Shown here: in pieces, positions 1,916 to 53,396 of the stretch | Position numbering within the stretch: the first letter of the stretch is position 1 | Layout: each line of letters starts with the position of its first letter | Assembly: GCA_002269645.1 (NCBI GenBank) | Contig: NIVC01001104.1 | Location: 62,001-126,000 of the forward strand | Reading direction: 5' to 3' | DNA length: 64,000 bases | DNA from: Macrostomum lignano | Lineage: Eukaryota | The notes under the pieces: generated by a model | Database searches by the model: none | Told to the model about the DNA's origin: nothing | The model's input: the letters and a program-made list of their open reading frames with translations, nothing else | Position numbers and translations under genes: made by a program

Positions 1916-11787
<9,872 letters not shown>

Positions 11788-16145: not shown

Positions 16146-21636
<5,491 letters not shown>

Positions 21637-28415: not shown

Positions 28416-30405
28416 CCTCCCCCCTTAGTTAACGCCCTCACTGCAGCATCAATCTGTCAGGTGGTGCTCGAACTCGATTCGGGTAGCGCCGGGATACTCG
28501 TTAGCAGCGTCAGCAGTGTCTGCCTGCGGCGAGGCCGACGTGCCGCCAGCGTCAGGTGCCGCGCAGTCCTCGGCCGGGGCTGTGCTGCTGTTCGATTCGG
28601 CCAACCCAGCGGGAGCCGACAGCAGCTGGTCAGCGTGTCGCGCTTGTACGCCGCGTCCGGAATCGACTGTGCAGTTGCGAGTGCCGGCATTGACAATGAC
28701 ACCTTCGGCCCAGCGACTGCTTTCTCCTGCACGAGCAGCAGTGCTGAAATCGCGGTAGAGCACGCGATCTCCAGGCTGGAACTGGCGCACTGGCCGCTGC
28801 TGCTGAAGCTGATGTCGCTGTTGCGTGGCCGAAGTCAACGATGGTGTCAGGAGATCCAGCCGGCTGCGCAGCTGGCGGCCAATGAGCAGCTGACTCGGCG
28901 CGGTGCCACTGACGCTGTGCGGAGTGTTGCGGTAGGCCATCAGCAGTCGTTGAAGTTGCTCATCGGGGTGACCGCACTTACTCAAATGCCGCTTCAGCAC
29001 CTGGACGAAGCGCTCGGCCTGGCCATTGGTCGCCGGGTGGAATGACGCCGAGAAGATGTGCCGGATGCCGTTGGAACTGACGAACTCAGCGAACTCGGCC
29101 GAAGCGAATTGTGGCCCGTTGTCCGACACCAAGCTTCTCGGTAGGCCGAGACGAGCGAAGATTTCTCCCAGGCAGCTGATCGTCGCAGTTGCAGTGGTGC
29201 TGCTCATCCTGTGCACCTCTGGCCACTTGCTGTGCGCGTCGACCAGGACCAGGTAAGTGCGGCCTTCCACGGGTCCCGCGAAGTCGATGTGCAACCGCTC
29301 CCATGGCTCAGTCGGGAATGGCCATGGCTGCACCGGGGCCTTGGATGGATCCGCCTGATTGAGCTGGCAGGTGCGACAGGCTTTTACTGCGGCCTCCAGG
29401 TCTTTGTCAATACTTGGCCACCAGACGTAGCTTCTCGCGAGGGCGCGCATGCGGCTGATGCCAGGGTGGGCTTGGTGCGGCTCGTTCAACACTTGTTATC
29501 GCAGGGCGGCTGGCACCACAACTCGAACGCCCCACAGCACGCAGCCCTGGTCAATGGACAGCTCGCTCTGGCGCCTGGCGAAGTCGGTCAGGTCGGCGCA
29601 GATAGTCGAACCCGTCTGCGGGCAGCGCAGCACGCGACCTAGCACCGCATCCGTCCTGGTGAGCCGCGCCACCGTCGCTGCAGTGGCGGCCGAACCTGCG
29701 CCCTCGTCCATCAGCAGCGAGTTAACCGCTGTCTCCTCCTCGAACTGCTGCGGCAATGGCAGCCGGGACAGCGAGTCGCAGTTGGCGTGCTTCTCCGTCG
29801 GCCGAAACTCGAGCGCATAGTCATAGCTCGCCAGCCGGATCGCCCACCGCTGCATGCGGGCTGCAGCGTGTGCCGGGATGCCTTTCCGCTCGCCCAGTAA
29901 CCCGAGTAGCGGCAGGTGATCAGTGACTATCGTGAATCTCCGGCCGTAGAGGAATTGATGGAAGCGGTGCAGCCCGAACATTATGGCCAGCGCTTCCTTG
30001 TCGAGCTGCGAGTAGCCCCGCTGTGCTGCGTTCAGGGTGCGGCTAGCGAATGCCACTGCGCAGTCTTTGTTGTTGATGCGATGGGACAACACCACACCCA
30101 CTCCGTATAGTGAAGCGTCACACTCGAGCCGCAGCGGCATATCCGGGTTGAAGTGCACAAGCACCGGTGAATGGAGCAGCAGACGCTTAGCTTCGCTGAA
30201 GGTGGTTTGCTGCGGCTTGTCCCACGTCCAGCGAACGTCCTTGGCCAGCAGCTGATTGAGCGGCACCACTACGGTGGACAGGTTAGGCAGGAACCGGCCG
30301 TACTGAGTCAGCATGCCGAGGAACGAGCGCAGCTGGCTGATGTCCTTCGGCGCCGGGGCGTCTTGAATTGCGGCCACCCTGTCCGTCAGCGGGCTGAGTC
30401 CACAT

Positions 30406-33400
30406 CCCAGTGGCAAAGCCGAGCTCGGTCCGAGCTCGGGCCGACGTCGGCCACTCGGCATTCGATCGGCCATACTAAAGTCGGCCAGCCGACGTCGGCC
30501 CGAACTCGGTAGAACCTCGGGGTGCCGCGCCGTTAACCGATTAAAAGTTTTAATCAATTAAGCAGAATTTACCTACGCTAATGAATTCGATATGATTAAA
30601 AAAGAACACCGCATAAATATAGATGAATAATTTACACTGAAAAAGTGACTCTTTTGCAATAAACAAAAACAACGCAATAATACAGCACTTTTGAACCACC
30701 AAAGTGGTGTAATGTGCTTTTTACACATACTAATTGTGTTTTTACTGAATTAGTTTCCTCGTTGAGTAGGTGATTTGACTTTTATGGATTTATTCTCCTT
30801 CGAGACGACCATGAAGTGCATGCGTTATAGGTACGGAAAATTCGAAGTACTGGATTTTAACAATTATATATATGAGTAATTTACCAGATAAAAAGAACAT
30901 AGCTTCGTTAGTAAAAATATAAATAAATAATTAACTGCTTTAGAATTTACTTAAGGCGTAATTATTGCTCATTTTTTGCCATTCATTTGAATATATTGCT
31001 CCCGTGCAGGTCAAGCCAATTGTAAACAGTGTTTGGCTCTTTTTAACGTGGCAATTCATTTAGCTTCTTAGTTATTATTTTTATTACACGTTCTTTGGAA
31101 GCATTTAGATGTTTCGGCAAAAATTCCAGAGACATACTTAGTCTTACAGTTAAGCCGTAACTAATTGAACTATAGCTACACTGTAATGCAATGTAAACTT
31201 GTTTTTTGGGGTTTAATGAAGATTTGCTTACAATTTATGAATAGGCGTATGAAATATGTTTTCATTAATGATAATTAGACATATTACGATGGCAATTCAC
31301 CAGCTATTTTCAGAATGGCCATCAAATAGTTATCTAGGAGTTAAAAGTGAATAAATATCTACAAAAAGCATATTTTCATGATAAAATGTTGAAAAGTATA
31401 GGATTGCAATAGGAGTTACCATAACTTAACTGTAGGAATGATATCTAGCTTAGGTCATAAATCCTGTGATTTGAAAAGTCTAAAATGGCCTAAATAAAGC
31501 CAGATTTTTAGGCTCCTATGATATTTTTATCCCTACTATATTAGGTCTAGCTTCTTATTTTTTATTTGTCTATGGCAATGCCATCATGAATTATATACAA
31601 TCAGTTAATTTAAGACATTGTTTATGTACTATAGGCCAGGATATAATGCCAATTGTGCATTTTATGGCAGGCAATTTAATGTAATTTTGCTATATATGCC
31701 AATTTTTTACTCTTTTGAATAGATTCATAGTATTCAGTTTATACTATATTGTTTTTCTAATGACTTTTTAGTATAACTATAGTATACTTATTTTACTATT
31801 ATAGGTTTTTACTTTATTTTTGCACCATAGACTAGATATTGATGCTATTTTTATATACTAGGGCCCTATGCCATATTTGGCATCAGTTTTGCACTGCAAA
31901 GTTTTGCACATCAATTTTTTTACTTTTTCATCATATGGCTTCAATTCTAACCCCCTTGATGTTCTAGATACAACACTTTGAGAAAATGGGGCGAGATTCT
32001 AAGCCTCCCCACGAGCGATCCAGAAGCAGCAGCACGACACCCATGCCCATGACCACCACATTGAGATGGGCAACGCAGTCGTTGCGAGGGACTTTGCTGC
32101 TGATGGCAGCTGGAAGCCTGCTGTTCTGACCGACTGCTCCAGGGCTGTGTCTCTCTTGCCAGTTTGACGATGGTCGAGAGGTCCATCGGCAGATCAATCA
32201 AGTGTCTGCGCGGCGCCTTCCAAAGTTGAGCAACCGCTATGTGCCGAGGTGCCTGACGATCAACCAGAGGCCCCTGCGGAGACGCCTGGCCAGGCGCCAG
32301 AGTTGAGCTCTGCGGCGCCACTTTGACGTTCGACCAGGGCAAGAGCTTAACCTGACCGGCTGCGCTACCAGTGACTATGGACTGTTCCTCTATGGACTGT
32401 GAACTGATTTGCGTCTTTTATTCCCGTTTTTATCTAACGCTTAATCTTTGTGGGGAGGAGTGTGGTGACTTGACTGAGCAAATTGTTGTTTGTTTTGTTA
32501 GCTTGTTTTTACTCCGTGTTTTGAGGTGGTGTTTTACCAGTTTCGCTGCGTGCTCCCTTCTGCGATATTTCGCTGTACATTCTTATGTACGCTCTGGATT
32601 CTGGCCGCTCTTGCTCTCCACCCTTAAGCCTCTTACACCCAATGTATCGTGCTCAATATTTACAATATAAATTGCAGTCGCTTTCCTCGTATCAAGCGTC
32701 TCGTTCTACAATCTAAAGTGAAGTCTTTACAGTTTATAATGTTAATAAATGCTCAACCAAATCCGTATCGCAACCCTTAACTCAACCTCTGTTTTCAGCT
32801 GTTTAGCTACTTTTTCTCTTTGTTTTCTTGCTTATTGGTTGAAAAGTTAATCTTGTATCATTATTAGCATTTGATAATACACTAGTGTGCTTGTGGTGGA
32901 TTTACTGTTGCGGTTTTCTTTTAATTCAATTATTTTAACTTCTAAATCGTTGTCTTATTTCACAATCATTTAATCCTGAACATGGTTGTTGGTTGTATAT
33001 TTGTTGGGTCAGAGAACTGAGTCTGGTGGATATGTATCTAATTCCGAGGGGAAATCAATTAACTAGTTATACTAGAGGCTCACCATAACTAGGCTCATAT
33101 ACGAGCGTACATTAACACTGCAATGCACTAACATGCTAGGAATGACATGGGATCTTTAACTCGATGGTTTCAATTCGTGTCATGTCATTTTCCCATTCAC
33201 CTTTTCTTTTTCATGTAATACCGAATTGTACATGTACAGTAAAATTATATAGAAAGTGAAAGTGGCACCTACATGTAGTCAATCTGCAAGAAGCAATATA
33301 AGCTTTATAATAAGCTAAATAAAGTATAGTGCAAAGCTACTCGGCATTACCGCGGTCAGCCGACCTCGGCCCGAGGTCGTCGGCCCGAGCTAGAACCGCC

Positions 33401-33468
33401 GTCAACCCGCCGAGCTCGGCCCGATCTCGGCGGACCGAGCTCGGGCCGAGCTCGGCTTTGCCACTGGG
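30406..33468. mobile_element. Non-autonomous CMC/EnSpm-like DNA transposon, 3063 bp, inserted in the Gypsy RT
   Basis: TIRs CCCAGTGGCAAAGCCGAGCTCGG / CCGAGCTCGGCTTTGCCACTGGG with subterminal CCGAGCTCGG palindromes. 2-bp TSD AT (30404-30405, 33469-33470). The empty site GAGTCCACATGCGTC is visible in copy A at about 25833-25847. No transposase ORF. The superfamily is inferred from the CCC termini plus 2-bp TSD. Confidence 0.88.
31960..32710 (+). mobile_element. Decayed 3' end of a second Gypsy element (integrase C-terminus, PPT, 250-bp LTR)
   Basis: Frameshifted QKQQHDTHAHDHHIEMGNAVVARDF...WKPAV / CQFDDGREVHRQINQV resembles Mag-type integrase tails. PPT GGGGAGGAG at 32452-32460, then TGTGGTGAC...TTCTACA at 32461-32710. 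Confidence 0.7.
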
Positions 33469-35558
33469 ATGCGTCAATGCGGTAGCCCAGATACTCGACA
33501 GAGTCCGTGAAGAACGGGCTCTTTTGCTTTTTCAGCCTGAGTCCCGACTCAAGGAGGCGCTGCAGAACTTCTTCCAGGTTTTTCTTATGTTGCTGCATCG
33601 TCTTGCTGGTGACCAGGATGTCATCGACAAACACCTGGACAGAGTCGAGACCTCCTAACAGAGTGTCCATCGTCCGTTGGAAGATCGCAGTGGCGCACTT
33701 GATGCCAAAAGGCATGCGATTGAACTGGTAGAGTCCCTTTGGCGTGTTGATCGTGACGAAGGCTTTGCTGACTTCGGCGAGCGGAAGCTGCAGGAAGGCA
33801 TTGGACAGATCGAGCTTTGTCCACTTGCAGCCGCCTCCCAGCTTGGCAAACAGGTCCTCGATCTTGGGCAGAGGACCTGCCGCTGCCGCCGATGCCGCTG
33901 CCGCCGATACCGCTGCCGCCGTTGCCGCAGCCGCCGTTGCCGCAGCCGCCGTTGCCGCAGCCGCCGTTGCCGCTGCCGCCGTTGCCGCTGCCGGGGTTGC
34001 CACCGCTGAACCGATGCCCTCTGTGGTGCGCTGATGTCGCCTGCTTGCGGCTTTCTCTCTTGCCGAAAAATTGCAGATTGGCCGCAGACTGCGGTGTTGC
34101 CTTTTGTGCCATCTCCAGGGACGAACGCTCAGCTGACTCCAGCGACATCGCCTTCTCTTGCAGGGATTCGAAGGTCGGCTCAACCACTTCCAGCAGCTTG
34201 GCTCGGAAGGCGTCACTTCGAAGGCCGAACACAAGTTGGTCTCGAAGCCGCTCATTTAGCGACACACTGAAGTTGCAGTCAGCTGACAGAGCCTGGAGCC
34301 CCGCGATGAATGCAGTGAAGCTCTCGCCTGCTTGCTGAGTTCGTTGTTGGAAACGGAACCTCGCAGCCAGCTCCGAAAGCTTTGGTGCAAAGTGCGTTGT
34401 CAGCAGCTTCCTCAGGTCAGCGTAAGACTTCTGCGCCACTTGGCCTGGCTGGCACAGCCTCCACAGTGTGATGTAACCCTCCTCTCAGATCGACGTGATC
34501 CTTATATAATGAAGTGTTCCTACCTTGGATCAGAGTAACCACATTTGTCTCATCCTTCACCTCTTTGCAGATGAAGTACTGCTCGAGACGCTCAAGGAAG
34601 ACCTCTCGACGTTGGTAGATGGTAGTAGTTGGCCCAGCATGGGCGGACTCGTCGCCATTGTATGTGTGTCAGACTGCTCTAGTGTGTGTCAGACTACTCT
34701 AGTGTGTGTCAGACTGCTCTAGTGTGTGTCAGACTGCTCTAGTGTGTGTCAGACTGCTCTAGTGGTTGTCAGACTGCTCTAGTGTGTGTCAGACTGCTCT
34801 AGTGTGTGTCAGACTGCTCTAGTGGTTGTCAGACTGCTATCATAAGGATTGGACTGTTCTAACAAACTCAAGAAGTTTAAATCCAGGCTTTTCCAATATG
34901 GTCAGCTAAAGTTTCAGTTGTGGGTCAGACTGTACTTATGTCTGTGTTAAAAACTCACCAGAGAAGGCACACTGCACTAAAGCAGCCAGACTCAAAGCTA
35001 GAAGCGCCAACCTCGTGCTGTACCTGGGGAATTAGAAATAACTCAATTCTGTGTCAGAGTACGCAGTATTGAGTTGCAGACTGTTGTAATTAAAAGTTGT
35101 TGATTCGAATATCACCAGATTCGTCAGGCATCTTAAATAATTTGAAATTTATTCCAGGCACGAATGCGCACGATATAACTGTAGATAGAAGATTAAATAT
35201 TTCAGAAAACATCATTATTTACCTTTCAGAATATGGACTTGCTGACCTACTAATTTATCTAAAACAATTAATACAATTAATAATGGCAGCGCTAGTAGGG
35301 CAGAGCGATTCGGCGCGCGCAATGTCGATTTAGCCTGTCAGCTGATGTCGCTGACGGCGCAATAGGTCGCTTTTGGACAAACCATGCATCAGCCCGTTCA
35401 AGGACTATACACCTCTGAGAATAGTGGATTGGTCCACCATAGGGGCCTAATCTCGGGCCGCCACCTCAAGTTTTGGTCCCTATGGGAGTCTCCGGTGGGC
35501 TAACCATTCGGCGGGGTTCGGATGCCTTCATAGGTGATTGCGTGTCCTAACTGCGAAA

Positions 35559-37817: not shown

Positions 37818-39445
37818 TCAGCTCTGCTTCGGGCCCTGAAGCTTCTGTCGAACATCTTCGGGTATGGCCTCGACGCAGCGCTGATGATCTTCCACCCGCA
37901 TCGCCGCCAGGACGCCGCGGTTGTTCGGCCGTTCAACTCCGGGATCGTAGCGCAGCTGCCGACCGAAGATGTCGGTCAAGCGACCGCCGGCTGCGCGCAG
38001 CAACGCCTCCGGAGCGCAGGTGTCCCACTTCTTGCAGCCGGCCGAGGCGAAGATGTACACGTGAGCCCGCCGCTCCAGCAGCAGCAGCACCTTGTGGCCG
38101 CAGCCTCCGACTCGGAGGGTCTGGGTTTTATAGATGGCGACGGAGGGATAGGTAGGCAGAGGGTAATACTGGAGACAGCGGAGAGGGTAGCCCACACCGG
38201 GCAAAGGGTAACACACAGAGGGCAAAGGGTAACACACAGAGGGCAAAGGGTAACACAGAGGGCAAAGGGTAACACACAGAGGGCAAAGGGTAACACACAG
38301 AGGGTAAAGGGTAACACAGAGGGCAAAGGGTAACACACACAGAGGGCAAAGGGTAACACACACAGAGGGCAAAGGGTAACACACACAGAGGGCAAAGGGT
38401 AACACACACAGAGGGCAAAGGGTAACACACACAGAGGGCAAAGGGTAACACACAGAGGGCAAAGGGTAACACACAGAGGGCAAAGGGTAACACACACAGA
38501 GGGCAAAGGGTGACACACACAGAGGGCAAAGGGTAACACACAGAGGACAGAGGAGAGCCTAACACACAGTGCTGAGGAGACACTGATTGCAGTACTACCT
38601 GAGTAGGACCGCAGGCAGTCACGGCGGCCGTGACAGTATCGCTGTCGTGACTGCGCGTGGTGACAACTACGCGACCAGTGGGCAGAGGCCGGCGCGAGTC
38701 CGAGCCCATGCCGAAGATGCCCAGACCGTCCAGGCCCCAGACCAGCCGGCCAGCCTGACTGGGGTCGGTTAGGTAGCGATAATAAGGCTGGTACACCACC
38801 CCGGCAACAGCTTGACCTTCCAGTGCCACTCCAATCAGCACGGTGACATTGTCGAGTAGATTGTCGGCAAATTCCGATGTGCCATCGAGTGGATCGACCC
38901 AGACTGTTAGATCTTCGGGTCGAACGTTTTGTACTTTTTCGGGGCATCTGCAGTACACAGAGGGTGGGTTGGTTTTTATGTATTTCTTTTAGTTGGTTAT
39001 TTAGTTAGTCAGTTAAGTTAGTCATTCAGTTAGTTAGTTAATTAGTTAGTTAGTCATTCATTAGTTAGTTAGTTAGTTAGGTAGTTAGTTAGTTAGTCCC
39101 CCTAAGTCCAGAAATGCCACGAGTCTCAGCCCTGGCACACCTGTGACACTGCTGCAGCACTTCGTCCAGCGGTTCAACGATCTCATCAGGGCCAAGCGGC
39201 GCCGCTGCAGGGTCCTCCTCCTCCTCGCCGATGACGGTCAGGCCAGGGAAGGCGGCCCGCAGGTTGGCCGTGATGAGCCGCTGGGCGCCTCGATCTGCCT
39301 GCGTCTGCAGATCATTGTGGCCCTTGATGACAATGCCGAGCTCGCCACTGCGCATCACCTCGCGGACATAGGCGCCAGCGCGCACCGCGGCAGATGCTGA
39401 GCAGGCTAGCAGGCGCATTAGCAGTGGCGCAGCTGGAGATGGCAT
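37818..39445 (-). CDS. BPNT1: 3'(2'),5'-bisphosphate nucleotidase 1, 318 aa, 3 exons
   Basis: Exons 39445-39141, 38947-38599, 38120-37818 (957 nt, GT-AG). Motifs DLQTQADR, VIGEE, VWVDPLDGT, VTVLIG, VTTRSH, LRVGGCGHKV and GCKKWDTCAPEALLRAAGGRLTDIFG. Confidence 0.96.
38198..38545. repeat. About 20-24-nt minisatellite (AGAGGGCAAAGGGTAACACAC), BPNT1 intron 2
   Basis: Tandem units are visible. Confidence 0.95.
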
Positions 39446-42400
39446 TGCAATATTGCATGCGAGAGAGTGGAGGAAAACAAAGTTTAAATTGAGTAAATGG
39501 CAGGAGCAGCAATGAAAATTTTCTAGACATTAAAACTGAAATCATTACCTTATAACATAAAATAGCCTTGAACAGGCCTAACTTAATTGATATTAATATT
39601 ATTATTATCATAAGGCACGAGTTAAAAGAGACATGAGACAGTGTAATTTTAAACAGACTAGATAACTAGATAATTTTAAGCTTAGGCCTACTTATAGCAA
39701 CCTTAGTTCTTATTGTCATAAGTAGAAAGCAATGGGACAGTATATATTGCACCCCTACAAGCTATATGTATATTAAGGGCATGACTTATGGGGTTTTTGT
39801 AGTAGATAAGATAACCATACTCATCTCACCTTGTATGAGCCAATATTCCTAAGCCAACATTTCTCTAGTAGTAACAAACTATAAACTTCTAGTCTTTATA
39901 TTACTTAATAGTTTTTGTTTTAGCATTATTAAGATAGGTTAGTTAGCTAGATATTTATCCCAAAAGACAAAGTATACAAATAAAGAAATTTGGTTAAGTA
40001 GTATACAACAAAAAACAAACAAAGGAACAAAAATATATCTAAACTGATATAAATTGCACATATTTATTGAGTAGCCCCCTTCCCCTACTAGACTATAACT
40101 TTCATTTTATTTAGGCATAATTTAAAAAACTCTAAGAGTCTAGACCTAGTCACCTAGAAAATGTACTTCCCTAGCTGACTAGCCTGGCTTGGCATCATAG
40201 ACAACATATTGCATGCAATATAAGTATTAGCATGTAGCAATATAGCTATCTATCTATTTCTGTCACTGTAGCCCTCTCTGCTTATGCTTAGAATTTATAA
40301 GTTTGGATACATAGTATATACTAGGCCTATACCTTGATGCCTTAATTGATGTTGCAAACTATGATACACTGTAGTTAAGTGCATGTGCATATTTTGCTAC
40401 TCTTAGGCCTATCAATCTGATGTAGAAAATTTTATAAGCATTCATGGACAATTCCCAATTTATTACTAGCATGTGCATAGTAAGCCTAGGCTATCTTACT
40501 ATCTATTCTAGACCTATAACGCAATTATTTGATATTTGATAAATTGATAATCATATGCTCCAGATGAATGGGTAATTTAAGTAGGCCTCCATTTCACTTA
40601 GCAAATGAACAATAGACTTCACAAAAATTGCGCAACTGTGCCACAGTTTGACCATGACGACCGTCAACTGAGTGAAATTAAGGTAAGATCGAAAAACCAG
40701 ACTTCAGACTTTAAAAGAAGCACAAAATGCTAAGTTTTTATTAGCAACATCAACATTAACACGGCTAGGAAAAATAGAAAAAAAATGAGTGAAATATCAA
40801 GCTCTGATAGATTCTAGGAAGTTTTTTAAACAATTTTTTATGAGTCCTTCATTTAACTGCACGTTACTAACAATTAAAAATTGAATTTGCAATGCGTGCT
40901 GCTTGGACTTCAAAAAATTGATGTCATGTTATTATAATGCAGAATGCAGCCCTGCTCTTAAAGTAAAAAAACCCAATGTATTTTTGTTCTTACAAAGATA
41001 GGCTTAGGTCCATACATGCATAACCTTTCTATTTTAAACCAGCCATTGAGCTTACTTAAAAAATTTCGCTTAGGCCCTAGAAATACTATTATACTAATAC
41101 TAGTCGTTCTTGTTCTAGTTGCAATTTAGTTAGGCTAGCTTCAGTTTTTCGTTAGGCCCTAGCCAGTTAGTGTGCCGCACAAATGCAAAGTAAAAATTGA
41201 TTACATGTAGGATACAACTTGTATTGCATAATAAAATGTGTAAAACCCATGATGTATTGTATCAAGTACAAACAGGCTTATGCAAATTTGTTTAACTTGA
41301 ACTGCAGAATGTTTTGAAAAAGGCAATTGTTATTATTATGCTATGGTGACCATATAAATAGCGAAACCATTTTTTACAGTCAACACATAAGACACTGTCT
41401 GGGCTTAAGGTTTTAACTTAATGTAGGGAAGGGGGCTAACTATATAAATAGCAAAATTGTTATTTTTATGGTCATCATATGTAAGAAGCAAAATGGCTAT
41501 TTTTACAATCATAGAGATAAAAGTTCATTTACATTAATAGTTAATAATTATATAAGTAAGCTTAAAGCTAGCTGTTGGTAACAAGAACTATTATAAGTTA
41601 CTATAGGTCATATAAATAATGTTTCTTTATTTTTTAAACTTAACAACCTCTTATTTTTTGCAGTGCAAGTTTGTTAATTGTCACTTAATTTATATGTTTT
41701 TTATGGGCCTAGGACCAAGACCACACTTGAGGGAGCTAGAGGAGAAATTTGGCTTAATGTGTAATGTTATTAGATAGGCTCCCTAGTGCTAAAAGGAGAT
41801 GAGTAGATAGAAGAGCCAGCAAGATAAGGTTGGGTTGCAAGAAAGGAACCTATGAGAGGAATAGCAATGCTAGAAGATTGGTAGCTCCCCCTTAATCTGG
41901 GTTTTTTGGCCCTTTGAAAATCTTATTCGCAATTGGATTTTTGGCATTAGAGGCCAATCTGGCAACTTCATCTTCCCCATGCCAGTTGCCAACCTCAAAA
42001 AATGATTTTGTAAATATAATAAAAGTGCCATATGAATCAATATGATGGAATTGTTAGTTTGTTATTGTTTGCCATATAGATAGCAATCTTAGAGTTAAGA
42101 GAACAAATTTCTGCCTTTCAAACATAGCCTTGGAAATATCCATCTTCAAGAATTTGGCTAGTTGCCAATGGGCAACCAAAAATAGCTAGGCCTATTGGCA
42201 ACTGGATTTTGAGCCCCAAAGGCTAGCTAGCAACTAGATTTCTAACCTTAAAAAAACCTAGCCTTCAATACCAATAGCTAGTAATAGGCCTAGCTGTGGT
42301 AGTCTTGGTATATGGATAGTCTTATATCTTAGTTATGCGCCATTTTATATGTTAACCTTAAAAATAACCATTGCTTTTTATTTGTATCATCATTGTAACA

Positions 42401-44229
42401 ATAACAACTGCCTTTAAAAAAACAATAAATAAAAATGATTTCCTGAATACTGGGCTTTATGCAATGCAACCAACCTCTTTAGCCTTATCCCAATAATTTC
42501 ATATTGTAGCATCAAATACACAACACAATTTAGATAAGCTAGGACCTAGGCCTAATTGGGTAGACAAATGCAAATGATCCCAATTGCAGCACATAGGCAT
42601 TTTGGTAAGCAGTATCTAGCATAGATCAGCCTGGCATAGTGCGGCGTGGCATGGCACCCAAGGTGAAATTCATTTAGGTAAAACAAATAATGCATTTTGT
42701 ATAAAAAGTAAAAAAATATATGTACATTATATGTAAAACTTCATCAAAATTTTTCTTTGCAATAAAGGAGCTTCAGTAAATTAATATTGGTGCTAGTGTT
42801 ATCTTTGTGTACATTTAAATCCAATGATATATATAATTTTCTGGCAAAAAAATCTACTATTATGTGTGCCTTTCTTGGTGAATTTTTTTTGTTCTGCGCA
42901 CTTGATTTATAAAGTATATCTTGGCATGGTGCAATGTGGCAAAGTGATAAGAGGCAGCAAAAGGTGCAATGTAGTATGGTGAAGCAGTGGGATGTAGACA
43001 AAACAATGTATATGTACATTATAATGTGTTTTTTCTATATAAAAAAATCTGCCTTGTGTGCCTTCCCCCTAAATCTCCCACTGGGTGCAATATGGCAAAG
43101 TGAAGTGCTTCTCTACCTATCTAAAATCTTTATTTAGGTGCCATTGCGGCACAGTTAGGGTAGGTGTCTGGGGCATCTGGCACCTAAGCCATGCACTATA
43201 ATAAGGCAAAAGATTAACATTACTATATCTAGACCTAATGCAAAAGGCTATGAAGAAGTTAGGGCCTATGACAAGTTTATGCCAAAATCTAGAGCTAGTG
43301 TCAAAGAGATTCAAAATATTTTGTCCTAGATAATTGCCACTGAAAACCTTATAAAAAAGAAACTTTGATTTCAACCAATAATACTGAGTTTTATTGTATA
43401 AAATTATAGTATTTGTCTATAATTAGAACATTAGAATTAGCTAAAAACTAGATCAAAAAGAGTGATTGACATGACATGATAAAATATGTGTTAATTATAA
43501 ACGTTAAAAGTTGGCAAAAATACTCAAACTATCATCTCACTCTTTATAACTACAAAAATATAGACCTATAAACATATTGAACAATTGTACTAATCAGCAA
43601 ATTATCTATCTAGTTCATCTAAAATACCAATCATAAATATTATCAAAATCTAGAATAGGCTAGGCCTAGGCCTAATAAGTATTTAGCAGTGCATAAGTGG
43701 TATAAGGACGATTTTATTTTAGTTCTATAATACTTTAGCTTTTTGCATTGTGCATAAAAGTGTACAAAGTGAGTGTCCTATATTTAGTATATTCAGTAGA
43801 TCTTATCTTTATTTTATTGTCTATATGTAAATTCTAGAGTAATATATATATTTATGGATCATACTTAAATAGCAATGCTAAAAGTATAAAGCTGGAATAA
43901 AATTATCAAATTTCATTTTTAATCCTAGTAAATTCTCATTTTTGTTAGGCCTACCTTTAGCCTTAAGCTTTAGATTTCTTTATTCTATATCCAATGCGTG
44001 GGTTTCTTAATGCAAATGAGAAATTTGGAGTCTCAACTGACTCTGCTGCTTTATAATTGACCTTGGCAAGACTCAAATGGGCAATTAACTTGGCTTGAGT
44101 CCCTTAGGAAAATTTTGTATAACAGAGGTCTTATAATTAGATCTAGAAAAATAAATAAGCAGATATACAGTATTCCGAAAGAATCAATAAGAACTGCATA
44201 ATATCCTCCCAATCGCGCACATATTGCAG

Positions 44230-45903
44230 GCAAAAACTCGCATTGTTGGTCGCGAAGTGGAGTTTGCTCGGCTTCGCCAATTGCTGGAACAGCCTCCCGA
44301 GTCCACGGTGTCCTTTGTACACCTGTGGGGCCCGCCGGGCTGTGGCAAGACCCTTCTGGCCGAGGCTGCGCTATCCGGCCTGCCTCACCTGCGGCTCACC
44401 TGCACCGAGTCGGCTGGCAGCGTCAGGAAGCTGGTAGACTTCATCATTCACCTGGCTTCCAGCGGGGATGGCTGCTCCAGGAGGCCTGATCCCGCAGACG
44501 ACTGGGCCAGCGCTCTTGGCTGCTGCCTCCGGCCCGGAGACTGGCTCGCTCTGGACGACGCCGAGCGTCTGGCCGAGTCCGCCGATGGCAAAATACTGGC
44601 CGCCCTGATGAGAATCCGCCAGCTGACTGGCGCTCGTCTGCTGCTGGTTGGCCGCCTGCCCTGGACCAGCTACGCCAGGGGCTGCGCCGCCGCGGCCGCC
44701 GCCTCTGCCTATTGGTTTGTTTGCTTGTGTTTAGTTGCTTGGGGCGAGTTTCCCAGATCCTCAGTTGCTGCTAGGGGCGAGTTTCCCAGATCCTCAGTTG
44801 CTGGGGGCGAGTTTCCCAGATCCTCAGTTGCTGGGGGCGAGTTTCCCAGATCCTCAGTTGCTGGGGGCGAGTTTCCCAGATCCTCAGTTTCTGGGGGCGA
44901 GTTTCCCAGATCCTCAGTTGCTGGGGGCGAGTTTCCCAGATCCTCAGTTGCTGGGGGCGAGTTTCCCAGATCTTCAGTTGCTGGGCCAGCCTCCCAGATC
45001 CTCAGTTGCTGGGCCAGCCTCCCAGATCCTCAGTTGCTGGGCCAGCCTCCCAGATCCTCAGTTGCTGGGCCAGCCTCCCAGATCCTCAGTTGCTGGGCCA
45101 GCATCTCAGATCGTCAGTCGGTGAGCCAGCTATCCCAAATCCCAAATCGCATCTGCCCCCGCAGCCTCCACCTGCCGGCCTACACCAAGCCGCAGCTGGT
45201 GGACATTGTGTCAGCTGGCCTACCTGGCGGCGACCGCGACCCCATCGTCCAGATGGCCGTCGACATCGCTTTCCCGATGACGCGGCAGCCCGCACTCATC
45301 GCTGAGGCCGTCGCCTCCTGCCGGTCCGCCTGCTCCGCTAGTAGCGGTGGCGGCAAGATCAAAGCGATCCTGTGCTCCCATCTGCGCGGCCTGCTGACTC
45401 CGCTGACGTCTCCAGTCGCATCGGCTGCGCTGACTGGCGTCGGGGGCGTGAAGCAGCAGCAGCAGCAGTTTGCCGACCTGCCGCTGCTCAGCCGCTTCCT
45501 CCTTCTGGCCGCCTTCCTGTGCACCCGCGTGCCGCCCTCTCACGATCGCCGAATGTTCGCCTTCAACTCCGGTCGCCGGCAGAAGCCTCGGAAGAAGCAG
45601 AAAAAGCCGGCTGCAGTAGCCGCCGCCGCCGCTATGGAGGCCCTGGCCGTCCGACCGGTGCCGCTGGAACGCCTGCTGAACATCTGTCGGGTGATCTCGC
45701 GAGAGTCGCAGGTCTTCGACGCCACCGCCGCCCTGCCCTGCCTGGTCGATCTGGTCCGCCTGGGCTTCCTTGCTGCCGCGGCGCCGACCCGAGACCGGCT
45801 GGCCAATCCGCGATTTCGCTGCCTGCTGAGCGAGGAGGCCGCCAACAGGCTTGCCGACCTGTGCGAGTTCTGTTTAGTTGCTTATACTAAGGCTGACTTT
45901 TAG
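44230..45903 (+). CDS. ORC5: Origin recognition complex subunit 5, 2 exons, start codon not in this exon
   Basis: Acceptor TTGCAG at 44229. Exons 44230-44714 and 45165-45903 (phase-2 intron, TG|GTTTGT...CCGCAG|C). IVGRE, Walker A GPPGCGKT, LHLPAYT, SRFLLLAAFL, PVPLERLL and PRFRC match ORC5. Confidence 0.9.
   Translation, partial: AKTRIVGREVEFARLRQLLEQPPESTVSFVHLWGPPGCGKTLLAEAALSGLPHLRLTCTESAGSVRKLVDFIIHLASSGDGCSRRPDPADDWASALGCCLRPGDWLALDDAERLAESADGKILAALMRIRQLTGARLLLVGRLPWTSYARGCAAAAAASAYWFVCLCLVAWGEFPRSSVAARGEFPRSSVAGGEFPRSSVAGGEFPRSSVAGGEFPRSSVSGGEFPRSSVAGGEFPRSSVAGGEFPRSSVAGPASQILSCWASLPDPQLLGQPPRSSVAGPASQILSCWASISDRQSVSQLSQIPNRICPRSLHLPAYTKPQLVDIVSAGLPGGDRDPIVQMAVDIAFPMTRQPALIAEAVASCRSACSASSGGGKIKAILCSHLRGLLTPLTSPVASAALTGVGGVKQQQQQFADLPLLSRFLLLAAFLCTRVPPSHDRRMFAFNSGRRQKPRKKQKKPAAVAAAAAMEALAVRPVPLERLLNICRVISRESQVFDATAALPCLVDLVRLGFLAAAAPTRDRLANPRFRCLLSEEAANRLADLCEFCLVAYTKADF
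44745..45110. repeat. 28-nt family locus 2 (with a 30-nt variant), ORC5 intron
   Basis: About 7 units of CAGTTGCTGGGGGCGAGTTTCCCAGATCCT followed by CAGTTGCTGGGCCAGCCTCCCAGATCCT units. Confidence 0.95.
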
Positions 45904-45931: not shown

Positions 45932-47480
45932 TCTAATCCGATCATAATTAAAGGAATCCAGATCCCCTAATCCGATTATAATTAATGGAATCTAGATAGC
46001 CTAATCCGATCATAATTAAAGGAATCGAGATCCCCTAATCCGATCATAATTAAAGGAATCCAGATCCCCTAATCCGATCATAATTAAAGGAATCCAGATC
46101 CCCTAATCCGATCATAATTAATGGAATCCAGATCCCCTAATCCGATCATAATTAATGGAATCCAGATCCCCTAATCCGATCATAATTAATGGAATCCAGA
46201 TCCCCTAATCCGATCATAATTAAAGGAATCCAGATCCCCTAATCCGATCATAATTAATGGAATCCAGATCCCCTAATCCGATCATAATTAAAGGAATCCA
46301 GATCCCCTAATCCGATCATAATTAAAGGAACCCAGATCCCCTAATCCGATCATAATTAAAGGAATCCAGATCCCCTAATCCGATCATAATTAAAGGAATC
46401 CAGATCCCCTAATCCGATCATAATTAAAGGAATCCAGATCCCCTAATCCGATCATAATTAATGGAATCCAGATCCCCTAATCCGATCATAATTAAAGGAA
46501 TCTAGATCCCCTAATCCGATCATAATTAAAGGAATCTAGATAGCCTAATCCGATTATAATTAAAGGAATCGAGATCCCCTAATCCGATTATAATTAATGG
46601 AATCCAGATCCCCTAATCCGATCATAATTAAAGAATCTAGATCCCCTAATCCGATCATAATTAAAGGAATCCAGATCCCCTAATCCGATCATAATTAAAG
46701 GAATCTAGATAGCCTAATCCGATTATAATTAAAGGAATCCAGATCCCCTAATCCGATCATAATTAAAGGAATCGAGATCCCCTAATCCGATCATAATTAA
46801 AGGAATCCAGATCCCCTAATCCGATCATAATTAAAGGAATCCAGATCCCCTAATCCGATCATAATTAAAGGAATCGAGATCCCCTAATCCGATCATAATT
46901 AAAGGAATCTAGATAGCCTAATCCGATCATAATTAAAGGAATCGAGATCCCCTAATCCGATCATAATTAAAGGAATCCAGATCCCCTAATCCGATCATAA
47001 TTAAAGGAATCTAGATAGCCTAATCCGATTATAATTAAAGGAATCCAGATCCCCTAATCCGATCATAATTAAAGGAATCGAGATCCCCTAATCCGATCAT
47101 AATTAAAGGAATCTAGATAGCCTAATCCGATTATAATTAAAGGAATCCAGATCCCCTAATCCGATCATAATTAAAGGAATCGAGATCCCCTAATCCGATC
47201 ATAATTAAAGGAATCCAGATCCCCTAATCCGACTATAATCAATAGGAATCCAGATCCCTTAATCCCATTATGATCAATGTGAATCTAGATCCCCTAATCC
47301 TATTATGATCAATGTGAATCTAGATCCCCTAATCCTATTATGATCAATGGGAATCCAGATCCCCCAATCCTATTATGATCAATGGGAATCCAGATCCCCT
47401 AATCCCACTATGATCAATAGAAATCCAGATTCCATAATCCCATCATAATCAATAGGAATCCAGATCCCCTCATCACATTG
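45932..47480. repeat. 34-nt minisatellite (TAATCCGATCATAATTAAAGGAATCCAGATCCCC), about 1.5 kb
   Basis: Array starts about 30 nt after the ORC5 stop and degenerates at its right end. Confidence 0.97.
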
Positions 47481-48009: not shown

Positions 48010-48350
48010 GGATCTTGGAAGCCAGCCTCCCAGATCCTTAGTTGCTGGGCCAGCCTTACAGAGTGTCAGTTGCTGGGCCAGCCTCCCAGATCCTTAGTTG
48101 CTGGGCCAGCCTCCCAGATCCTCAGTTGCTGAGCCAGGCTCCCAGATCCCCAGTTGCTGGGCCAGCCTTCCAGATCCCCAGTTGCTGGGCCAGCCTCCCA
48201 GAGTGTCAGTTGCTGGGCCAGCCTCCCGGATACTCAGTTGCTGGGCCAGCCTCCCAGATACTCAGTTGCTGGGCCAGCCTCCCAGATACTCAGTTGTTGG
48301 GCCAGCCTCCCAGATCCCCAGTAGCTGGGCCAGGCTCCCAGATCCCCACT
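48010..48350. repeat. 28-nt family locus 3
   Basis: CAGTTGCTGGGCCAGCCTCCCAGA units, intergenic. Confidence 0.95.
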
Positions 48351-50005: not shown

Positions 50006-51306
50006 TCAAAAGGGATGCTTGAAACCGTCACCGCCGTAGCCTGGGGGGTAAGCCGGTGCTCCGTAATGGCGCTGCTGCGGCTGCTGCTGCATCTGAAACT
50101 GCATCTGCTGAGCCGACTGTCCAGTAGTAATGGAGCCCCTATAGGAGGCTGACAGCGGATGCTGCAGATGTCCGGTAGTGGCCGATTTTAATGCCGAAGA
50201 ATGCTGCTGAGAGAACACGGCTGTATTCGCGGCGGCTTTCGCCTGACGAACGCCTGCCACGGGGCTCGGACTGCGGGCTGCGCGCTTACCCAACCTGGTC
50301 GAAGATGAAGCTGGCGGAGGCTGGCTGTGCCGCATATCTTGCAAGTAAAGGCTTGTCTGCTGCTGCTGCTGCTGGAATTGCTGCTGCAGGTGTGGCAAGT
50401 GGCTCTGCACCTCCTTCTGGCGCTCCTTCTGGACTGACTCCTCGGCAAAGACCTCCTTGAAGCGGCTGAACAGCTTGCTCTTCTCTTTGCGCAGTTTTTC
50501 GAGGCGGCCTTGGAGTCGCTCTACCTTTCAGCGGGTACAGGACACGTGGTGTTGGGCCAGAGGTGAATGCTCAGGCTACGCTACCGCCACCCTCCCAAAT
50601 CCTCCGTTGCTGGGCCAGCCTCCCAGATCCTCAGTTGCTGGGCCAGCCTCCCAGAGTGTCAGTTGCTGGGCCAGCCTCCCAAAGTGTCAGTTGCTGAGTC
50701 AGCCTCCCAGACTGTCAGTTGCTGGGCCAGCCTCCCAGATCCCCAGTTGCTGGGCCAGCCTCCCAGAGTGTCAGTTGCTGGGCCAGCCTCCCAGAGTGTC
50801 AGTTGCTGGGCCAGCCTCCCAGATCCTCAGTTGCTAAGCCACCCTCCCAGATCCTCAGTTGCTGGGCCAGCCTCTCAGATCCTCAGTTGTTGGGCCAGCC
50901 TCCCAGATACTCAGTTGCTAGGCCAGCCTCCTAGATCCCCAGTTGTTGGGAGAGCCTCCCAGATCCTCATTTTTTGGGTCACCTTCCAAGTTCCAGTCCT
51001 CAGTTGCTGGGCCGCCGTCCCAGATCCTCAGTTTCTGCGCCAGCCTCCCAGATATTCAGTTGCTCACCTTCCCAAATTCTCTTAGAATGACAAATTAAAA
51101 GCTTGCAGGCTCCCAACCTCATCTTTGGTCTTTCTCAACGACTGCAGCGTCTGCCTGCGGAGTTCCTCCCGCTCTGCTCGCAGCCGCTGATTGGTGGCGT
51201 CAAGCATTTTCATGTCGGCGTCCTTCTTGCGCTGGCGGACGATGTGCCGCTTCAGCGATTGGTACATCGCCTGAGACATTTTCGGTCGGTCATACATCAG
51301 AGGCAT
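50006..51306 (-). CDS. GPS2: G protein pathway suppressor 2 homologue, 235 aa, 2 exons
   Basis: Exons 51306-51118 and 50524-50006 (phase 0). MPLMYDRPKMSQAMYQSLKRHI...TKDEVERLQGRLEKLRKEKSKLFSRFKEVFAEE matches the GPS2 N-terminal coiled coil, followed by a Q/P/S-rich tail. Confidence 0.88.
50600..51060. repeat. 28-nt family locus 4, GPS2 intron
   Basis: CAGTTGCTGGGCCAGCCTCCCAGA(TCCT/GTGT) units. Confidence 0.95.
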
Positions 51307-53396
51307 CTCGATCTGAAAGTAGAATTTCGAATCTAATTATTTATAGACTTGCATGCTGTTCTTACAGTGTAATCAGTGTTGTGCCTTTAGAATAACTTTC
51401 TTGCTAAATTCAACTTTAATTTTTTATCAGTTTCTACAATATCCAAATTCATAGCTATATCTAAAACATATCATTATTAACATGAGAGTTTTTAAGGAGG
51501 GTAATGTTTTTAAACAGGAACTATTCCCACGGGAATACCTTGATTTCATAGGAATAGAAAGGTAGAAAGAACTAACAATATGATAGTCTATAAATATTTG
51601 TTATAACTCAATGTCAAAGACTATAATAAGACTATTTCTCTGATAGAAAGACATTGTAATCATAGAAGTCTTCTCATGCATGAGTCTTTTAATGAGTTAT
51701 ATTTTATTCTAAAATAAATTATAAAGTATTTTAAAATAGTTTAATACTTGAAAATAACCAAATATATAAACTTTGTCTTATTCAAGAATAGTTTAAAACT
51801 TGTTATTATAAATCTGAATATATTTCAATGCATAGTCTCTAAAAGTAAGTTTCATAATTTTTTTCAATAGAATGGTTTCAAAAATGCTCTAAAAACTACA
51901 AAATGCTTGATGAGTAGACTAGACTGGAATAGATGTTAGATTAGAGTAGAATCTAGAAGAGAATAACTTTTGCAATTGTAATATATCTGTGTATCTAATT
52001 TAAAAGTAAAGAATTTTGTATTTACTTTATCTCTGAGCTGTATTTGTATTATAGTATTTCTATAGTATTTCTCTTTTATTGTACTTTCTACTGTATTTTT
52101 TTATGTAATGTTGCGTAATTGTTTTATAATGTAGTTTTGTTTTAACAAACAATATTATTATTAATTAATATATAATAAATTGTTAATGATTCACTCATAA
52201 GAGATTGCTACTTTGATTTGGCACTTTCGGCTGAGAATTCAAAAACAGGCTCCACGGTATTCATTTCGTTACACAATGCAGGAGCAAAGTATTATGAATA
52301 TTCTTCTAAAACGTTTTAAACAAAAATGCTAACTTGCATTCATGAATATGTCTTTTACAAATTTTTTTACAAGCCACAATTCAAGACATACAGTAAATGG
52401 TACCTTAACGTCAATAGTCACTAACTAAAGTAGACTCGTAATGCTAAGAAATCTGTTATATTGAATTTGATTTAAAATAAATATTTGAGTCCTGAATTCG
52501 CACCATGTTTCGAGTTTTGAATGTGCGACGAGTGTATTATTTTCTGAACTTCCGTGAAAGCTTTTCAAAGTCTTACTGCTGAATGTAGATCAGTTTCTAG
52601 GATAATTATGAATTCAAAAATATTTTAGTCAGTAGATTAAACAAAAAGTAACTACAATTTAGAATAAAATCTAATATAATTTATTATAAAGTCAAATATA
52701 ATTTGCAGTCCAAAAATGCAAAAACATGCATGTGTATACTTGACATTTGAAAAAATTGTGTTCCTTAGCTAAGTACGCAACTCACGTTACTTTAGGAAAT
52801 ACATGTACCAGATGAGGACGCACCTTTTTTCAATCTTAGAACCGCACATTTTGCTTCGATGCGCTTTTCCCCTACTGTCAGTAGGCTAGCTTAGGAATTT
52901 CTCTCCATTCTCTCATCTAGGCTAAGTTCTTTACTATTTTATGCCATTACTATTAGTTATGTTAGAAACTCAATGTACTTCTCTTAGGATTCTAATTTTG
53001 GATCGTTTACGCACCTTTGAAGGTCAGACTGTCTGGGTTTGAGATGGATTGACCTCCAACAGTCTAGACAGGCGACACTAAGTCTGGGAGGAACGTTTTC
53101 AACCTCGTTCTGACCCCCAGATTTGTGGCTTTTTTTACTGTTTTCGGTGATTTATGGCCGTCTAGCTGTCACTTTTGGCTCCAGCCTGTCTGGGTCAAAG
53201 AGGTCTTTCCAGCTTTCCCCACTCGCTCTGTTGCTTTCTCCTTTAATTTATGGGCTTTTTGCTGTCACTTTTGGCGCCAGGATGTCTAGACAAGTGACTT
53301 TTATTATGTTTTGCTTATGATTTATGACCGCGCCTGTCAACTTCCTTGGGGTCTGAAGGCCACCTGGTGGGGTAGGTTTTGGGGTCTTGAGCTCAG

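What the first reader, a model, noticed from the sequence alone, without database searches (positions are those of the whole stretch)
44188..44260. ORC5 has no start codon of its own: candidate for spliced-leader AUG initiation
Seen: in-frame TAA at 44188, no ATG before the acceptor TTGCAG|GCA (44229/44230), and the first in-frame ATG lies about 130 codons in, after Walker A. Known: flatworm spliced leaders end in AUG, which can act as the initiator. Adding it gives M-AKTRIVGRE, the expected length of an ORC5 N-terminus. GPS2 (TTTCAG|ATCGAG ATG, 6 nt) and possibly the M13 gene (CACAG|9 nt ATG) also have acceptors in frame with their ATG. Alternative: a cis exon at 40605-40682 (ATG...AAG|GTAAG, phase 0) would also splice in frame. 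Either way, an essential replication gene depends on a spliced-in start.
Basis: partly seen in the sequence, partly recalled or inferred. Interest (0 to 1): 0.7.

Follow-up and report, generated by a model that had tools for sequence, protein, structure and literature searches.

The report
ORC5 gene probably started by spliced leader
A flatworm (Macrostomum-type) ORC5 replication gene has no start codon of its own and most likely borrows the AUG at the end of the trans-spliced leader, a mechanism known in flatworms since 2006, so this is a probable but unproven new example, not a new phenomenon.

Summary
The sequence observation holds. An intact two-exon ORC5 gene (44230-44714, 45165-45903) opens directly after TTGCAG|GCA. 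An in-frame TAA lies 14 codons upstream, with no ATG in between. The first in-frame ATG is codon 127, behind the Walker A motif.

Ortholog alignments and Pfam place the protein's N-terminus within a few residues of the acceptor.

The window comes from a Macrostomum-type flatworm, not M. lignano itself. The three Macrostomum spliced leaders (SLs) described so far are identical over their last 35 nt and end in ...TTGCATG. The ORC5 acceptor fits the M. lignano trans-splice motif [T/C]TNCAG. Joining the SL there gives M-AKTRIVGRE, seven residues before the conserved GRE, against 3-17 in eight orthologs.

The proposed cis exon (40605-40682) is chance-level: 66 phase-0 ATG..|GT candidates lie upstream, and one of its quality appears in 26% of simulations. 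It would also give an unusually long N-terminus. It is not excluded.

I could not reach any transcript of this species, so trans-splicing at 44230 is inferred, not shown (about 0.65).

SL-AUG initiation is established flatworm biology (Cheng et al. 2006; Echinococcus and Schistosoma surveys). This is a new member of a known kind, of modest interest.

The parts
44188..44190 (+). In-frame TAA that closes the ORC5 reading frame 14 codons upstream of the exon
44221..44223 (+). In-frame ATA, one transition away from ATG. It could be a relic of a former own start codon, or the site of a base error or polymorphism (speculative).
   Evidence: read directly from the sequence
44224..44229 (+). 3' splice acceptor TTGCAG. 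It matches the M. lignano trans-splice motif [T/C]TNCAG and is the only in-frame AG between the stop codon and the conserved core.
44230..44714 (+). ORC5 exon 1 (AKTRIVGRE...AASAY + TG). It holds the AAA+ domain with Walker A at 44329-44352 and the first in-frame ATG at 44608-44610 (codon 127).
44715..45164 (+). The single ORC5 intron (GTTTGT...CGCAG), almost wholly minisatellite (30-nt units with 28-nt variants). It stays open in the exon frame.
   Evidence: the junction ..AY|C|LHLPAYTK aligns with Drosophila ..IVCLHLAQYNK
45165..45903 (+). ORC5 exon 2 with the ORC5_C domain and the TAG stop at 45901-45903. The C-terminus ..YTKADF aligns with the ..YLYDF(V/L) ends of orthologs.
40605..40682 (+). 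It is a chance-level rival and is not part of the preferred model.
37818..39445 (-). Divergent neighbour: BPNT1 (3'(2'),5'-bisphosphate nucleotidase), three exons, own ATG at 39445. I used it to place the organism (62% identity to M. lignano BOX15_Mlig003614g1). It shows that no same-strand gene lies upstream of ORC5.

Best explanation
The ORC5 pre-mRNA is transcribed from somewhere in the AT-rich 4.8-kb spacer that separates it from the divergent BPNT1 gene. Its 5' part (the outron, including the in-frame TAA and six upstream ATGs) is removed by spliced-leader trans-splicing at TTGCAG|G (44229/44230). The Macrostomum SL (...CAATTTATTGCAUG) is joined directly to GCA AAA ACU. Its 3'-terminal AUG therefore becomes codon 1, and the protein starts M-A-K-T-R-I-V-G-R-E.

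Shown here:
- the gene structure and ORC5 identity;
- the lack of any own AUG before codon 127;
- the reading frame and motif of the acceptor;
- from the literature, the AUG-terminated SL of the genus.

Inferred:
- that the window's species carries that SL;
- that this acceptor is used in trans;
- that translation starts at the SL AUG.
For: 1. ORC5 identity and integrity. Pfam ORC5_C scores 4.3e-19. AAA_16 runs from profile position 2 at residue 5. PDB ORC5 chains of fly and human match at 3e-14 to 8e-14, and the exon junction aligns exactly. The spliced frame is open for 408 codons with GC3 0.77.

2. No own start codon. TAA sits at 44188, no ATG lies before the acceptor, and the first in-frame ATG is codon 127, behind Walker A.

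3. The N-terminus lies at the acceptor. Human C10 and fly R15 align to residues 7 and 8. In a nine-sequence alignment the eight orthologs have 3-17 residues before the [C/G]R[E/Q/K/D] motif, and the SL-Met model gives 7.

4. The acceptor is real. TTGCAG fits [T/C]TNCAG, the top motif at 9,551 of 21,754 M. lignano trans-splice sites. An in-frame copy in the 13 available positions is expected 0.02 times, and it is the only in-frame AG there.

5. Organism and SL. The best hit of the neighbouring BPNT1 among 5.8 billion proteins is M. lignano at 62% identity; the next best is 53%. The intron minisatellite also occurs in an M. lignano UniProt entry at 79% over 40 aa. The SLs of M. lignano, M. cliftonense and M. 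hystrix are identical over their last 35 nt and end in ATG. The genome paper marks that ATG as a translation start codon.

6. Prior. 20-30% of Macrostomum genes are trans-spliced, and these are enriched for conserved and stem-cell genes. Use of the SL AUG as initiator is documented in flatworms. In E. granulosus, 143 of 187 SL-bearing clusters are full length from the SL ATG and some require it. 35 S. japonicum genes are reported to use it (Cheng et al. 2006 as cited).

7. No same-strand gene and no GC-rich island lies between 39446 and 44200 that could be a real coding exon.
Against: - There is no RNA evidence. No protein or transcript of this species' ORC5 is in the searchable collections.
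- The species is not identified. That it has an AUG-ending SL is extrapolated from three congeners.
- The [T/C]TNCAG motif also occurs at cis acceptors. BPNT1 intron 1 in this window ends in CTGCAG. The motif therefore argues for splicing at this site, not specifically for trans-splicing.
- The closest ORC5 I found (P0125, a transcript contig from run SRR26183987, 37% identity) carries its own ATG after a 64-nt leader with no Macrostomum SL. Dependence on the SL is therefore not a general property of this gene family.
- The SL AUG has a pyrimidine at -3 (TTGC AUG G), whereas four genes in the window that have their own ATG all have a purine there.
- The composition argument against the cis exon is weak. 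ORC5's own first 26 codons have GC3 13/26 against 11/26 for the candidate.
Confidence: 0.65

Rival explanations
1. A conventional cis-spliced first exon supplies the ATG. Either 40605-40682 (ATG...AAG|GTAAGA, phase 0, intron of 3,547 nt) or another small upstream exon is spliced to 44230.
For: The 40605-40682 segment is open, is phase-compatible and has a consensus GTAAG donor. The 44229 acceptor would serve a cis intron equally well. About half of conserved Macrostomum genes are not trans-spliced, as estimated from the figures. The candidate's GC3 (11/26) is not clearly lower than that of ORC5's first 26 codons (13/26).
Against: - 66 phase-0 ATG..|GT candidates exist in 39446-44180, three of them with GT[AG]AG donors.
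- A candidate of 20 codons or more with such a donor appears in 26% of first-order Markov simulations of the region (mean 0.42). The candidate is what chance provides.
- Its overall GC is 0.41, close to the 0.34 of the surrounding non-coding DNA and below the 0.56-0.65 of real first exons in the window.
- It would put 32 residues before the GRE motif, against 3-17 in the eight orthologs aligned.
- No 100-nt window in 39500-44199 exceeds GC 0.47.
- The peptide MNNRLHKNCATVPQFDHDDRQLSEIK has no counterpart at the N-termini of the aligned orthologs.
Confidence: 0.2
2. The start codon is missing only in this sequence. ATA at 44221 (in frame, giving M-LQAKTRIVGRE if it were ATG) would reflect a base-call error, an allelic variant or a recent mutation, and the gene normally uses its own ATG.
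For: ATA is a single transition from ATG and lies three codons upstream of the exon start. The resulting N-terminus, 10 residues before GRE, would be normal. The nearest ORC5 relative uses its own ATG just before LVGRE.
Against: This is purely hypothetical, with no second copy or reads to compare. Substitution errors are rare in polished assemblies. A good acceptor sits between this codon and the conserved core, which would be an odd coincidence (expected 0.02).
Confidence: 0.05
3. Translation starts at a non-AUG codon. In an unspliced leader that could be CUG at 44194, AUC at 44203 or 44212, AUA at 44221 or UUG at 44224. A near-cognate codon inside exon 1 is the other possibility.
For: Several near-cognate codons lie in frame after the TAA. 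The bacterial-code ORF lister picks TTG at 44224.
Against: Non-AUG starts are inefficient. An unspliced leader would carry six upstream ATGs within 400 nt (43854-44077). This reading also ignores the acceptor, for which a standard explanation is available.
Confidence: 0.05
4. The copy is not expressed as full-length ORC5. It is either a decaying duplicate or gives an N-terminally truncated product from Met127 that lacks the ATP-binding motif.
For: The protein is divergent (at most 31% identity to any ortholog) and its middle region is shortened. Macrostomum genomes carry many duplicates.
Against: The frame is open for 408 codons with strong codon bias (GC3 0.77). Walker A, the DDAERL Walker B-like motif and the ORC5_C domain are intact, and the first 126 codons match AAA_16 at 2.8e-9. 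The splice sites are preserved.
Confidence: 0.05

Closest known systems
Flatworm mRNAs that use the spliced leader's 3'-terminal AUG as initiator methionine (Cheng, Cohen, Ndegwa & Davis 2006, J Biol Chem 281:733; surveys in Echinococcus granulosus, PMC3510090)
   Same: The organism is a flatworm whose genus has an SL ending in AUG. The acceptor sits directly in front of the conserved coding sequence and in frame. There is no nearby AUG of the gene's own, and the conserved N-terminus is complete only if the SL AUG is used. [quoted passage not shown]
   Different: In those studies the SL-mRNA junction was observed in cDNA, and for Schistosoma translation from the SL AUG was tested. Here the junction is only predicted from genomic DNA. 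The lineage is a free-living macrostomid, for which I found no gene-by-gene list of SL-AUG-dependent mRNAs.
slORFs: open reading frames created by SL trans-splicing in nematodes, ascidians and euglenozoans (slORFfinder, PMC9851317)
   Same: The start codon is supplied in trans by the leader.
   Different: Those slORFs often start at near-cognate NUG codons and are frequently new or alternative ORFs. Here a canonical AUG would complete the main, ancient ORF of a housekeeping gene.
Metazoan ORC5 (human 5UJM/7JPO chain E, Drosophila 4XGC chain E)
   Same: The AAA+ domain with Walker A, the ORC5_C domain and the C-terminal ..DF end are shared, and the N-terminal tail is short.
   Different: Identity is only 20-31%. 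The lid and middle regions are shortened. The gene has a single intron filled with minisatellite, and it has no start codon of its own.
ORC5 transcript P0125/L002 (Logan contig from run SRR26183987, organism not named)
   Same: It is the nearest relative found (37% identity over the matched stretches). It also has a GC-rich coding region with an AT-rich leader, and a very short N-terminus (M-LVGRE).
   Different: It carries its own ATG after a 64-nt leader that has no Macrostomum SL.

Membership tests
SL-AUG-initiated flatworm mRNA | The organism has a spliced leader whose last three bases are AUG | tested here: inconclusive
   The SLs of M. lignano, M. cliftonense and M. hystrix are identical over their last 35 nt and end in ATG. 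All reported flatworm SLs end in AUG. The window's species is only placed near Macrostomum, and no SL RNA gene lies in the window.
SL-AUG-initiated flatworm mRNA | A 3' splice acceptor lies directly upstream of the coding sequence, in frame, so that the SL AUG becomes codon 1 | tested here: met
   TTGCAG|GCA at 44229/44230 is in phase 0 and fits [T/C]TNCAG. It is the only in-frame AG after the TAA, and the chance expectation is 0.02.
SL-AUG-initiated flatworm mRNA | No AUG of the gene's own can give a protein with the conserved N-terminus | tested here: met
   The first in-frame ATG is codon 127, behind Walker A. The orthologs' N-termini align to the acceptor.
SL-AUG-initiated flatworm mRNA | The SL sequence is observed joined to the acceptor in mature mRNA | not testable with these tools
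   No transcript or protein of this species' ORC5 is in the collections.
SL-AUG-initiated flatworm mRNA | Translation actually starts at the SL AUG | not testable with these tools
   This needs ribosome profiling, N-terminal proteomics or a reporter assay.
ORC5 (origin recognition complex subunit 5) | An N-terminal AAA+ ATPase-like domain with Walker A, plus the ORC5 C-terminal domain | tested here: met
   Pfam PF14630 ORC5_C scores 4.3e-19 (69.7 bits against a cut-off of 28.2) and PF13191 AAA_16 scores 2.8e-9. The PDB ORC5 chains 4xgc_E, 7jpo_E and 5ujm_E are the top hits. Walker A is GPPGCGKT.
ORC5 (origin recognition complex subunit 5) | Collinear with orthologs from end to end | tested here: met
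   The nine-sequence alignment runs from the GRE motif to the terminal DF and has 20 invariant columns.

The most novel reading that the evidence does not exclude
This macrostomid lineage has lost ORC5's own start codon (possibly ATG to ATA at 44221), although a related ORC5 still has its own. If so, an essential replication-licensing subunit is now obligately dependent on SL trans-splicing for translation. Origin licensing in proliferating stem cells would then be tied to SL availability. It would also be a dated example of how trans-splicing lets a gene's own AUG decay.
Probability: 0.5. Interest if true: 0.35.

Novelty: new member of a known kind. Interest (0 to 1): 0.25.

Why it matters
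It matters mainly for annotation. Gene finders that demand a genomic ATG will truncate such genes at Met127, extend them through the open minisatellite intron, invent an upstream exon, or drop them altogether. That may be why no macrostomid ORC5 turned up in the protein collections.

Biologically, it would add a core replication factor, in a free-living regeneration model genus, to the list of flatworm genes whose translation depends on the SL AUG. It would also give a simple test case for how often macrostomids depend on the SL AUG. It does not reveal a new mechanism.

Tried and rejected
1. Homology searches with the full ORC5 and with its low-complexity-free N-terminal 151 aa found nothing. 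There was therefore no same-species or close-relative protein whose N-terminus I could read.

Look-ups of the contiguous 559-aa ORF and of a single-exon neighbour (58094-58999) found no record. The species could not be named and no RNA contigs were reached.

3. Synteny route. I fetched the M. lignano BPNT1 locus (L001, NIVC01000224.1). It holds no ORC5 within 10 kb and shares no upstream DNA with the window.

4. The full HMMER search of 1.84 billion representatives gave ORC5 orthologs at no more than 37% identity. Many other hits were spurious matches to the translated intron satellite. The nearest ORC5 (P0125) comes from an unnamed run, and a paper search for that accession found nothing.

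5. Idea: the TATTGCA just upstream of the ORC5 acceptor and of the BPNT1 ATG could be a fossil of the SL 3' end. Rejected, because a local-alignment scan of the whole window against the SL gives only background scores of 20-22 and these sites are not among the best.

6. No SL RNA gene or any Rfam family is present in the window.

7. Idea: base composition rules out the cis exon. This holds only weakly, because 5' ends of real genes here also have low GC3.

8. The upstream 4.8 kb has no repeat copies elsewhere in the window that would mark the candidate exon as part of a mobile element.

9. A search for papers linking Macrostomum and ORC5 found none.
Full report
**1. What is in the sequence**

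TAA sits at 44188-44190. It is followed in frame by GAA CTG CAT AAT ATC CTC CCA ATC GCG CAC ATA TTG CAG, then GCA AAA ACT CGC ATT GTT GGT CGC GAA (A-K-T-R-I-V-G-R-E) from 44230. No ATG lies between the stop and the TTGCAG|G acceptor.

A script built the spliced CDS from 44230-44714 and 45165-45903. It is 1,224 nt and 407 codons plus TAG. Walking upstream in frame meets TAA at 44188 first. The in-frame ATGs are codons 127, 192, 200, 292 and 319. The Walker A motif GPPGCGKT is at codons 34-41, so the first ATG lies well behind it.

**2. What the gene is**

- Pfam gives ORC5_C (PF14630, E = 4.3e-19, 69.7 bits against a cut-off of 28.2). It also gives AAA_16, starting at profile position 2 at residue 5.
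- The best solved structures are ORC5 of Drosophila (4xgc_E, 2.8e-14) and human (7jpo_E, 5ujm_E).
- The exon 1/exon 2 junction I inferred (..AASAY|C|LHLPAYTK; donor GTTTGT, acceptor CCCCGCAG) aligns with Drosophila ..IVCLHLAQYNK.
- The C-terminus ..VAYTKADF* aligns with the ..YLYDF(V/L)* end of orthologs.
- The single intron (44715-45164) is almost entirely minisatellite. It happens to stay open in frame, which is why a mechanical ORF list shows one 559-aa ORF from a TTG at 44224.
- The coding sequence has GC 0.66 and GC3 0.77, set in spacer DNA of about 30-34% GC.

The gene looks functional.

**3. Where the N-terminus must be**

Human Cys10 and fly Arg15 align to residues 7 and 8 of the exon-1 translation. 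I aligned the SL-Met model with eight orthologs recovered from a full HMMER search of 1.84 billion representatives. The orthologs have 3-17 residues before the invariant Arg of the [C/G]R[E/Q/K/D] motif. M-AKTRIV-GRE has 7. The protein therefore begins at or within a few codons of 44230, and the genome offers no AUG there.

**4. Which organism, and does it have an AUG-ending SL?**

The divergent neighbour is a three-exon BPNT1 gene on the minus strand, with ATG at 39445. Among 5.8 billion proteins its best hit is M. lignano BOX15_Mlig003614g1 at 62% identity; the next best hit, from an annelid, is 53%.

The 28-nt intron satellite, when translated, matches the tail of an M. lignano UniProt entry (A0A1I8J1R5) at 79% over 40 residues.

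Exact look-ups of window ORFs found no record. ORC5 itself had no hit in the word-indexed search.

The window is therefore from a Macrostomum-type flatworm other than the annotated M. lignano assembly. I cannot name the species.

The literature reports the following:
- The M. lignano SL is CGGTCTCTTACTGCGAAGACTCAATTTATTGCATG (PMC8629364).
[quoted passage not shown] The authors mark that ATG as a start codon (PMC10468722 main text and Table S3).
- No SL RNA gene lies in the window.

**5. The acceptor**

In M. lignano the top motif at 21,754 trans-splice sites is [T/C]TNCAG, placed exactly at the junction. TTGCAG fits it.

In the 4.7 kb upstream the motif occurs 8 times (0.0017 per nt). An in-frame copy at one of the 13 codon boundaries between the TAA and 44230 is therefore expected 0.02 times. 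It is also the only in-frame AG in that stretch.

This argues strongly that 44229/44230 is a real splice junction. It does not tell trans from cis, because BPNT1 intron 1 in this window ends in CTGCAG.

**6. The cis-exon alternative**

Several points count against it:
- The region 39446-44180 contains 66 phase-0 ATG...|GT candidates, three of them with GT[AG]AG donors.
- First-order Markov simulations of the region give at least one candidate of 20 codons or more with such a donor in 26% of runs (mean 0.42).
- Its GC is 0.41, against 0.34 for its surroundings and 0.56-0.65 for the first 26 codons of four real genes here.
- It would give 32 residues ahead of GRE, outside the 3-17 range of the eight orthologs aligned.
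- No 100-nt window in 39500-44199 exceeds GC 0.47.

One point goes the other way. Its GC3 (11/26) is not clearly different from that of ORC5's own first 26 codons (13/26).

The alternative is unsupported but not excluded. I also cannot rule out some other tiny exon that ends in ATG|GT.

**7. Prior knowledge that bears on the choice**

- 20-30% of Macrostomum genes are SL trans-spliced.
- 69.9% of trans-spliced genes are conserved with human, against 36.9% of the others, and trans-splicing is enriched in stem-cell genes. A replication-licensing subunit fits that class.
- In Echinococcus granulosus, 143 of 187 SL-bearing clusters are full length when read from the SL ATG. [quoted passage not shown]
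- 35 S. japonicum genes were reported to use the SL AUG, and 10 of 15 Echinococcus orthologs do the same (PMC3510090).
- The founding paper is Cheng et al. 2006 (J Biol Chem 281:733). It is cited, but I could not read it.

**8. Counter-evidence and limits**

- The nearest ORC5 found (P0125, 440 aa, 37% identity) comes from a 1,421-nt transcript contig of run SRR26183987. It starts M-LVGRE from its own ATG, after 64 nt of AT-rich leader that has no Macrostomum SL. Dependence on the SL is therefore not ancestral for this gene.
- The M. lignano BPNT1 locus has no ORC5 nearby, so no orthologous 5' region could be compared.
- ATA at 44221 is one transition from ATG. It may be a relic of a former start codon, or a base difference peculiar to this sequence.
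- The SL AUG has U at -3, whereas four own-ATG genes in the window have a purine there.
- I did not see any RNA of this species.

**9. Verdict**

The best explanation is SL trans-splicing at 44229/44230, with the SL AUG as initiator (about 0.65). The rivals are:
- a cis-spliced upstream exon (about 0.2);
- a sequence-specific ATG-to-ATA difference at 44221 (about 0.05);
- non-AUG initiation (about 0.05);
- a non-functional or truncated copy (about 0.05).

The mechanism is established flatworm biology, so the finding is a new member of a known kind. Its practical value is for annotation, as a reminder that ATG-less first exons are expected in these genomes.

They are statistically empty, because being in frame is a 1-in-3 event and both genes have their own ATG.

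Noticed in passing
window 44715-45164; also 48021-48345 and 50586-51064: The only ORC5 intron is filled by a 30-nt/28-nt minisatellite (AGTTGCTGG[GGGCGAGTTT/GCCAGCCT]CCCAGATCCTC) that stays open in the exon frame, so naive ORF calling gives a 559-aa read-through. The same 28-nt family recurs twice around GPS2. Its translation occurs in the tail of M. lignano UniProt A0A1I8J1R5 ('ARL3'), which suggests satellite read-through in public flatworm proteomes.
   Followed up: partly
window 45933-47474: A 34-nt satellite (CTAATCCGATCATAATTAAAGGAATCCAGATCCC, about 45 copies, 93% matches) begins 30 nt after the ORC5 stop codon. The 3' UTR and polyadenylation site must lie in or before it.
   Followed up: no
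window 44221-44223: In-frame ATA three codons upstream of the ORC5 exon start, one transition from ATG. It could be the decayed former start codon, or a variant or error.
   Followed up: partly
window 51304-51314 (minus) and 15054-15067 (minus): GPS2 (TTTCAG|ATCGAG ATG) and the M13 peptidase (TCACAG|CTAGTAGAG ATG) have acceptor-like sites 6 and 9 nt upstream of their own ATG, with no stop codon between. An SL AUG there would add M-I-E or M-L-V-E. Only the GPS2 site fits [T/C]TNCAG.
   Followed up: partly
L001 9990-10040 (M. lignano NIVC01000224.1, BPNT1): The GenBank 'partial' CDS of BOX15_Mlig003614g1 starts 2 nt after an acceptor (TTCCAG|CTTTAAG). An SL AUG joined there would read ATG CTT TAA, a two-codon mini-uORF. 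The real start would be the gene's own ATG at 10035. This is a contrast case to ORC5.
   Followed up: partly
window 38200-38600 (minus strand, BPNT1 intron 2): This intron also consists of a minisatellite (units like GTTACCCTTTGCCCTCTGTGTGT). Satellite-filled introns seem to be the rule in this window.
   Followed up: no
window 25259-30557 and 33356-34439 (minus): These are fragments of an LTR-retrotransposon gag-pol (reverse transcriptase, RNase H and integrase-like ORFs) in at least two copies. They carry expanded GC-rich hexamer repeats that translate as (AAAATA)n or (GNGGC/S)n inside the ORF.
   Followed up: no
window 4380-5320, 16300-18300, 20470-21640, 62200-62920: Long simple or low-complexity arrays give spurious ORFs of hundreds of codons on both strands (TD/SV, GSET, poly-H/I/D/M and PQYHS repeats). 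GC skew is very strong locally, up to 0.86 at 20-21 kb.
   Followed up: no
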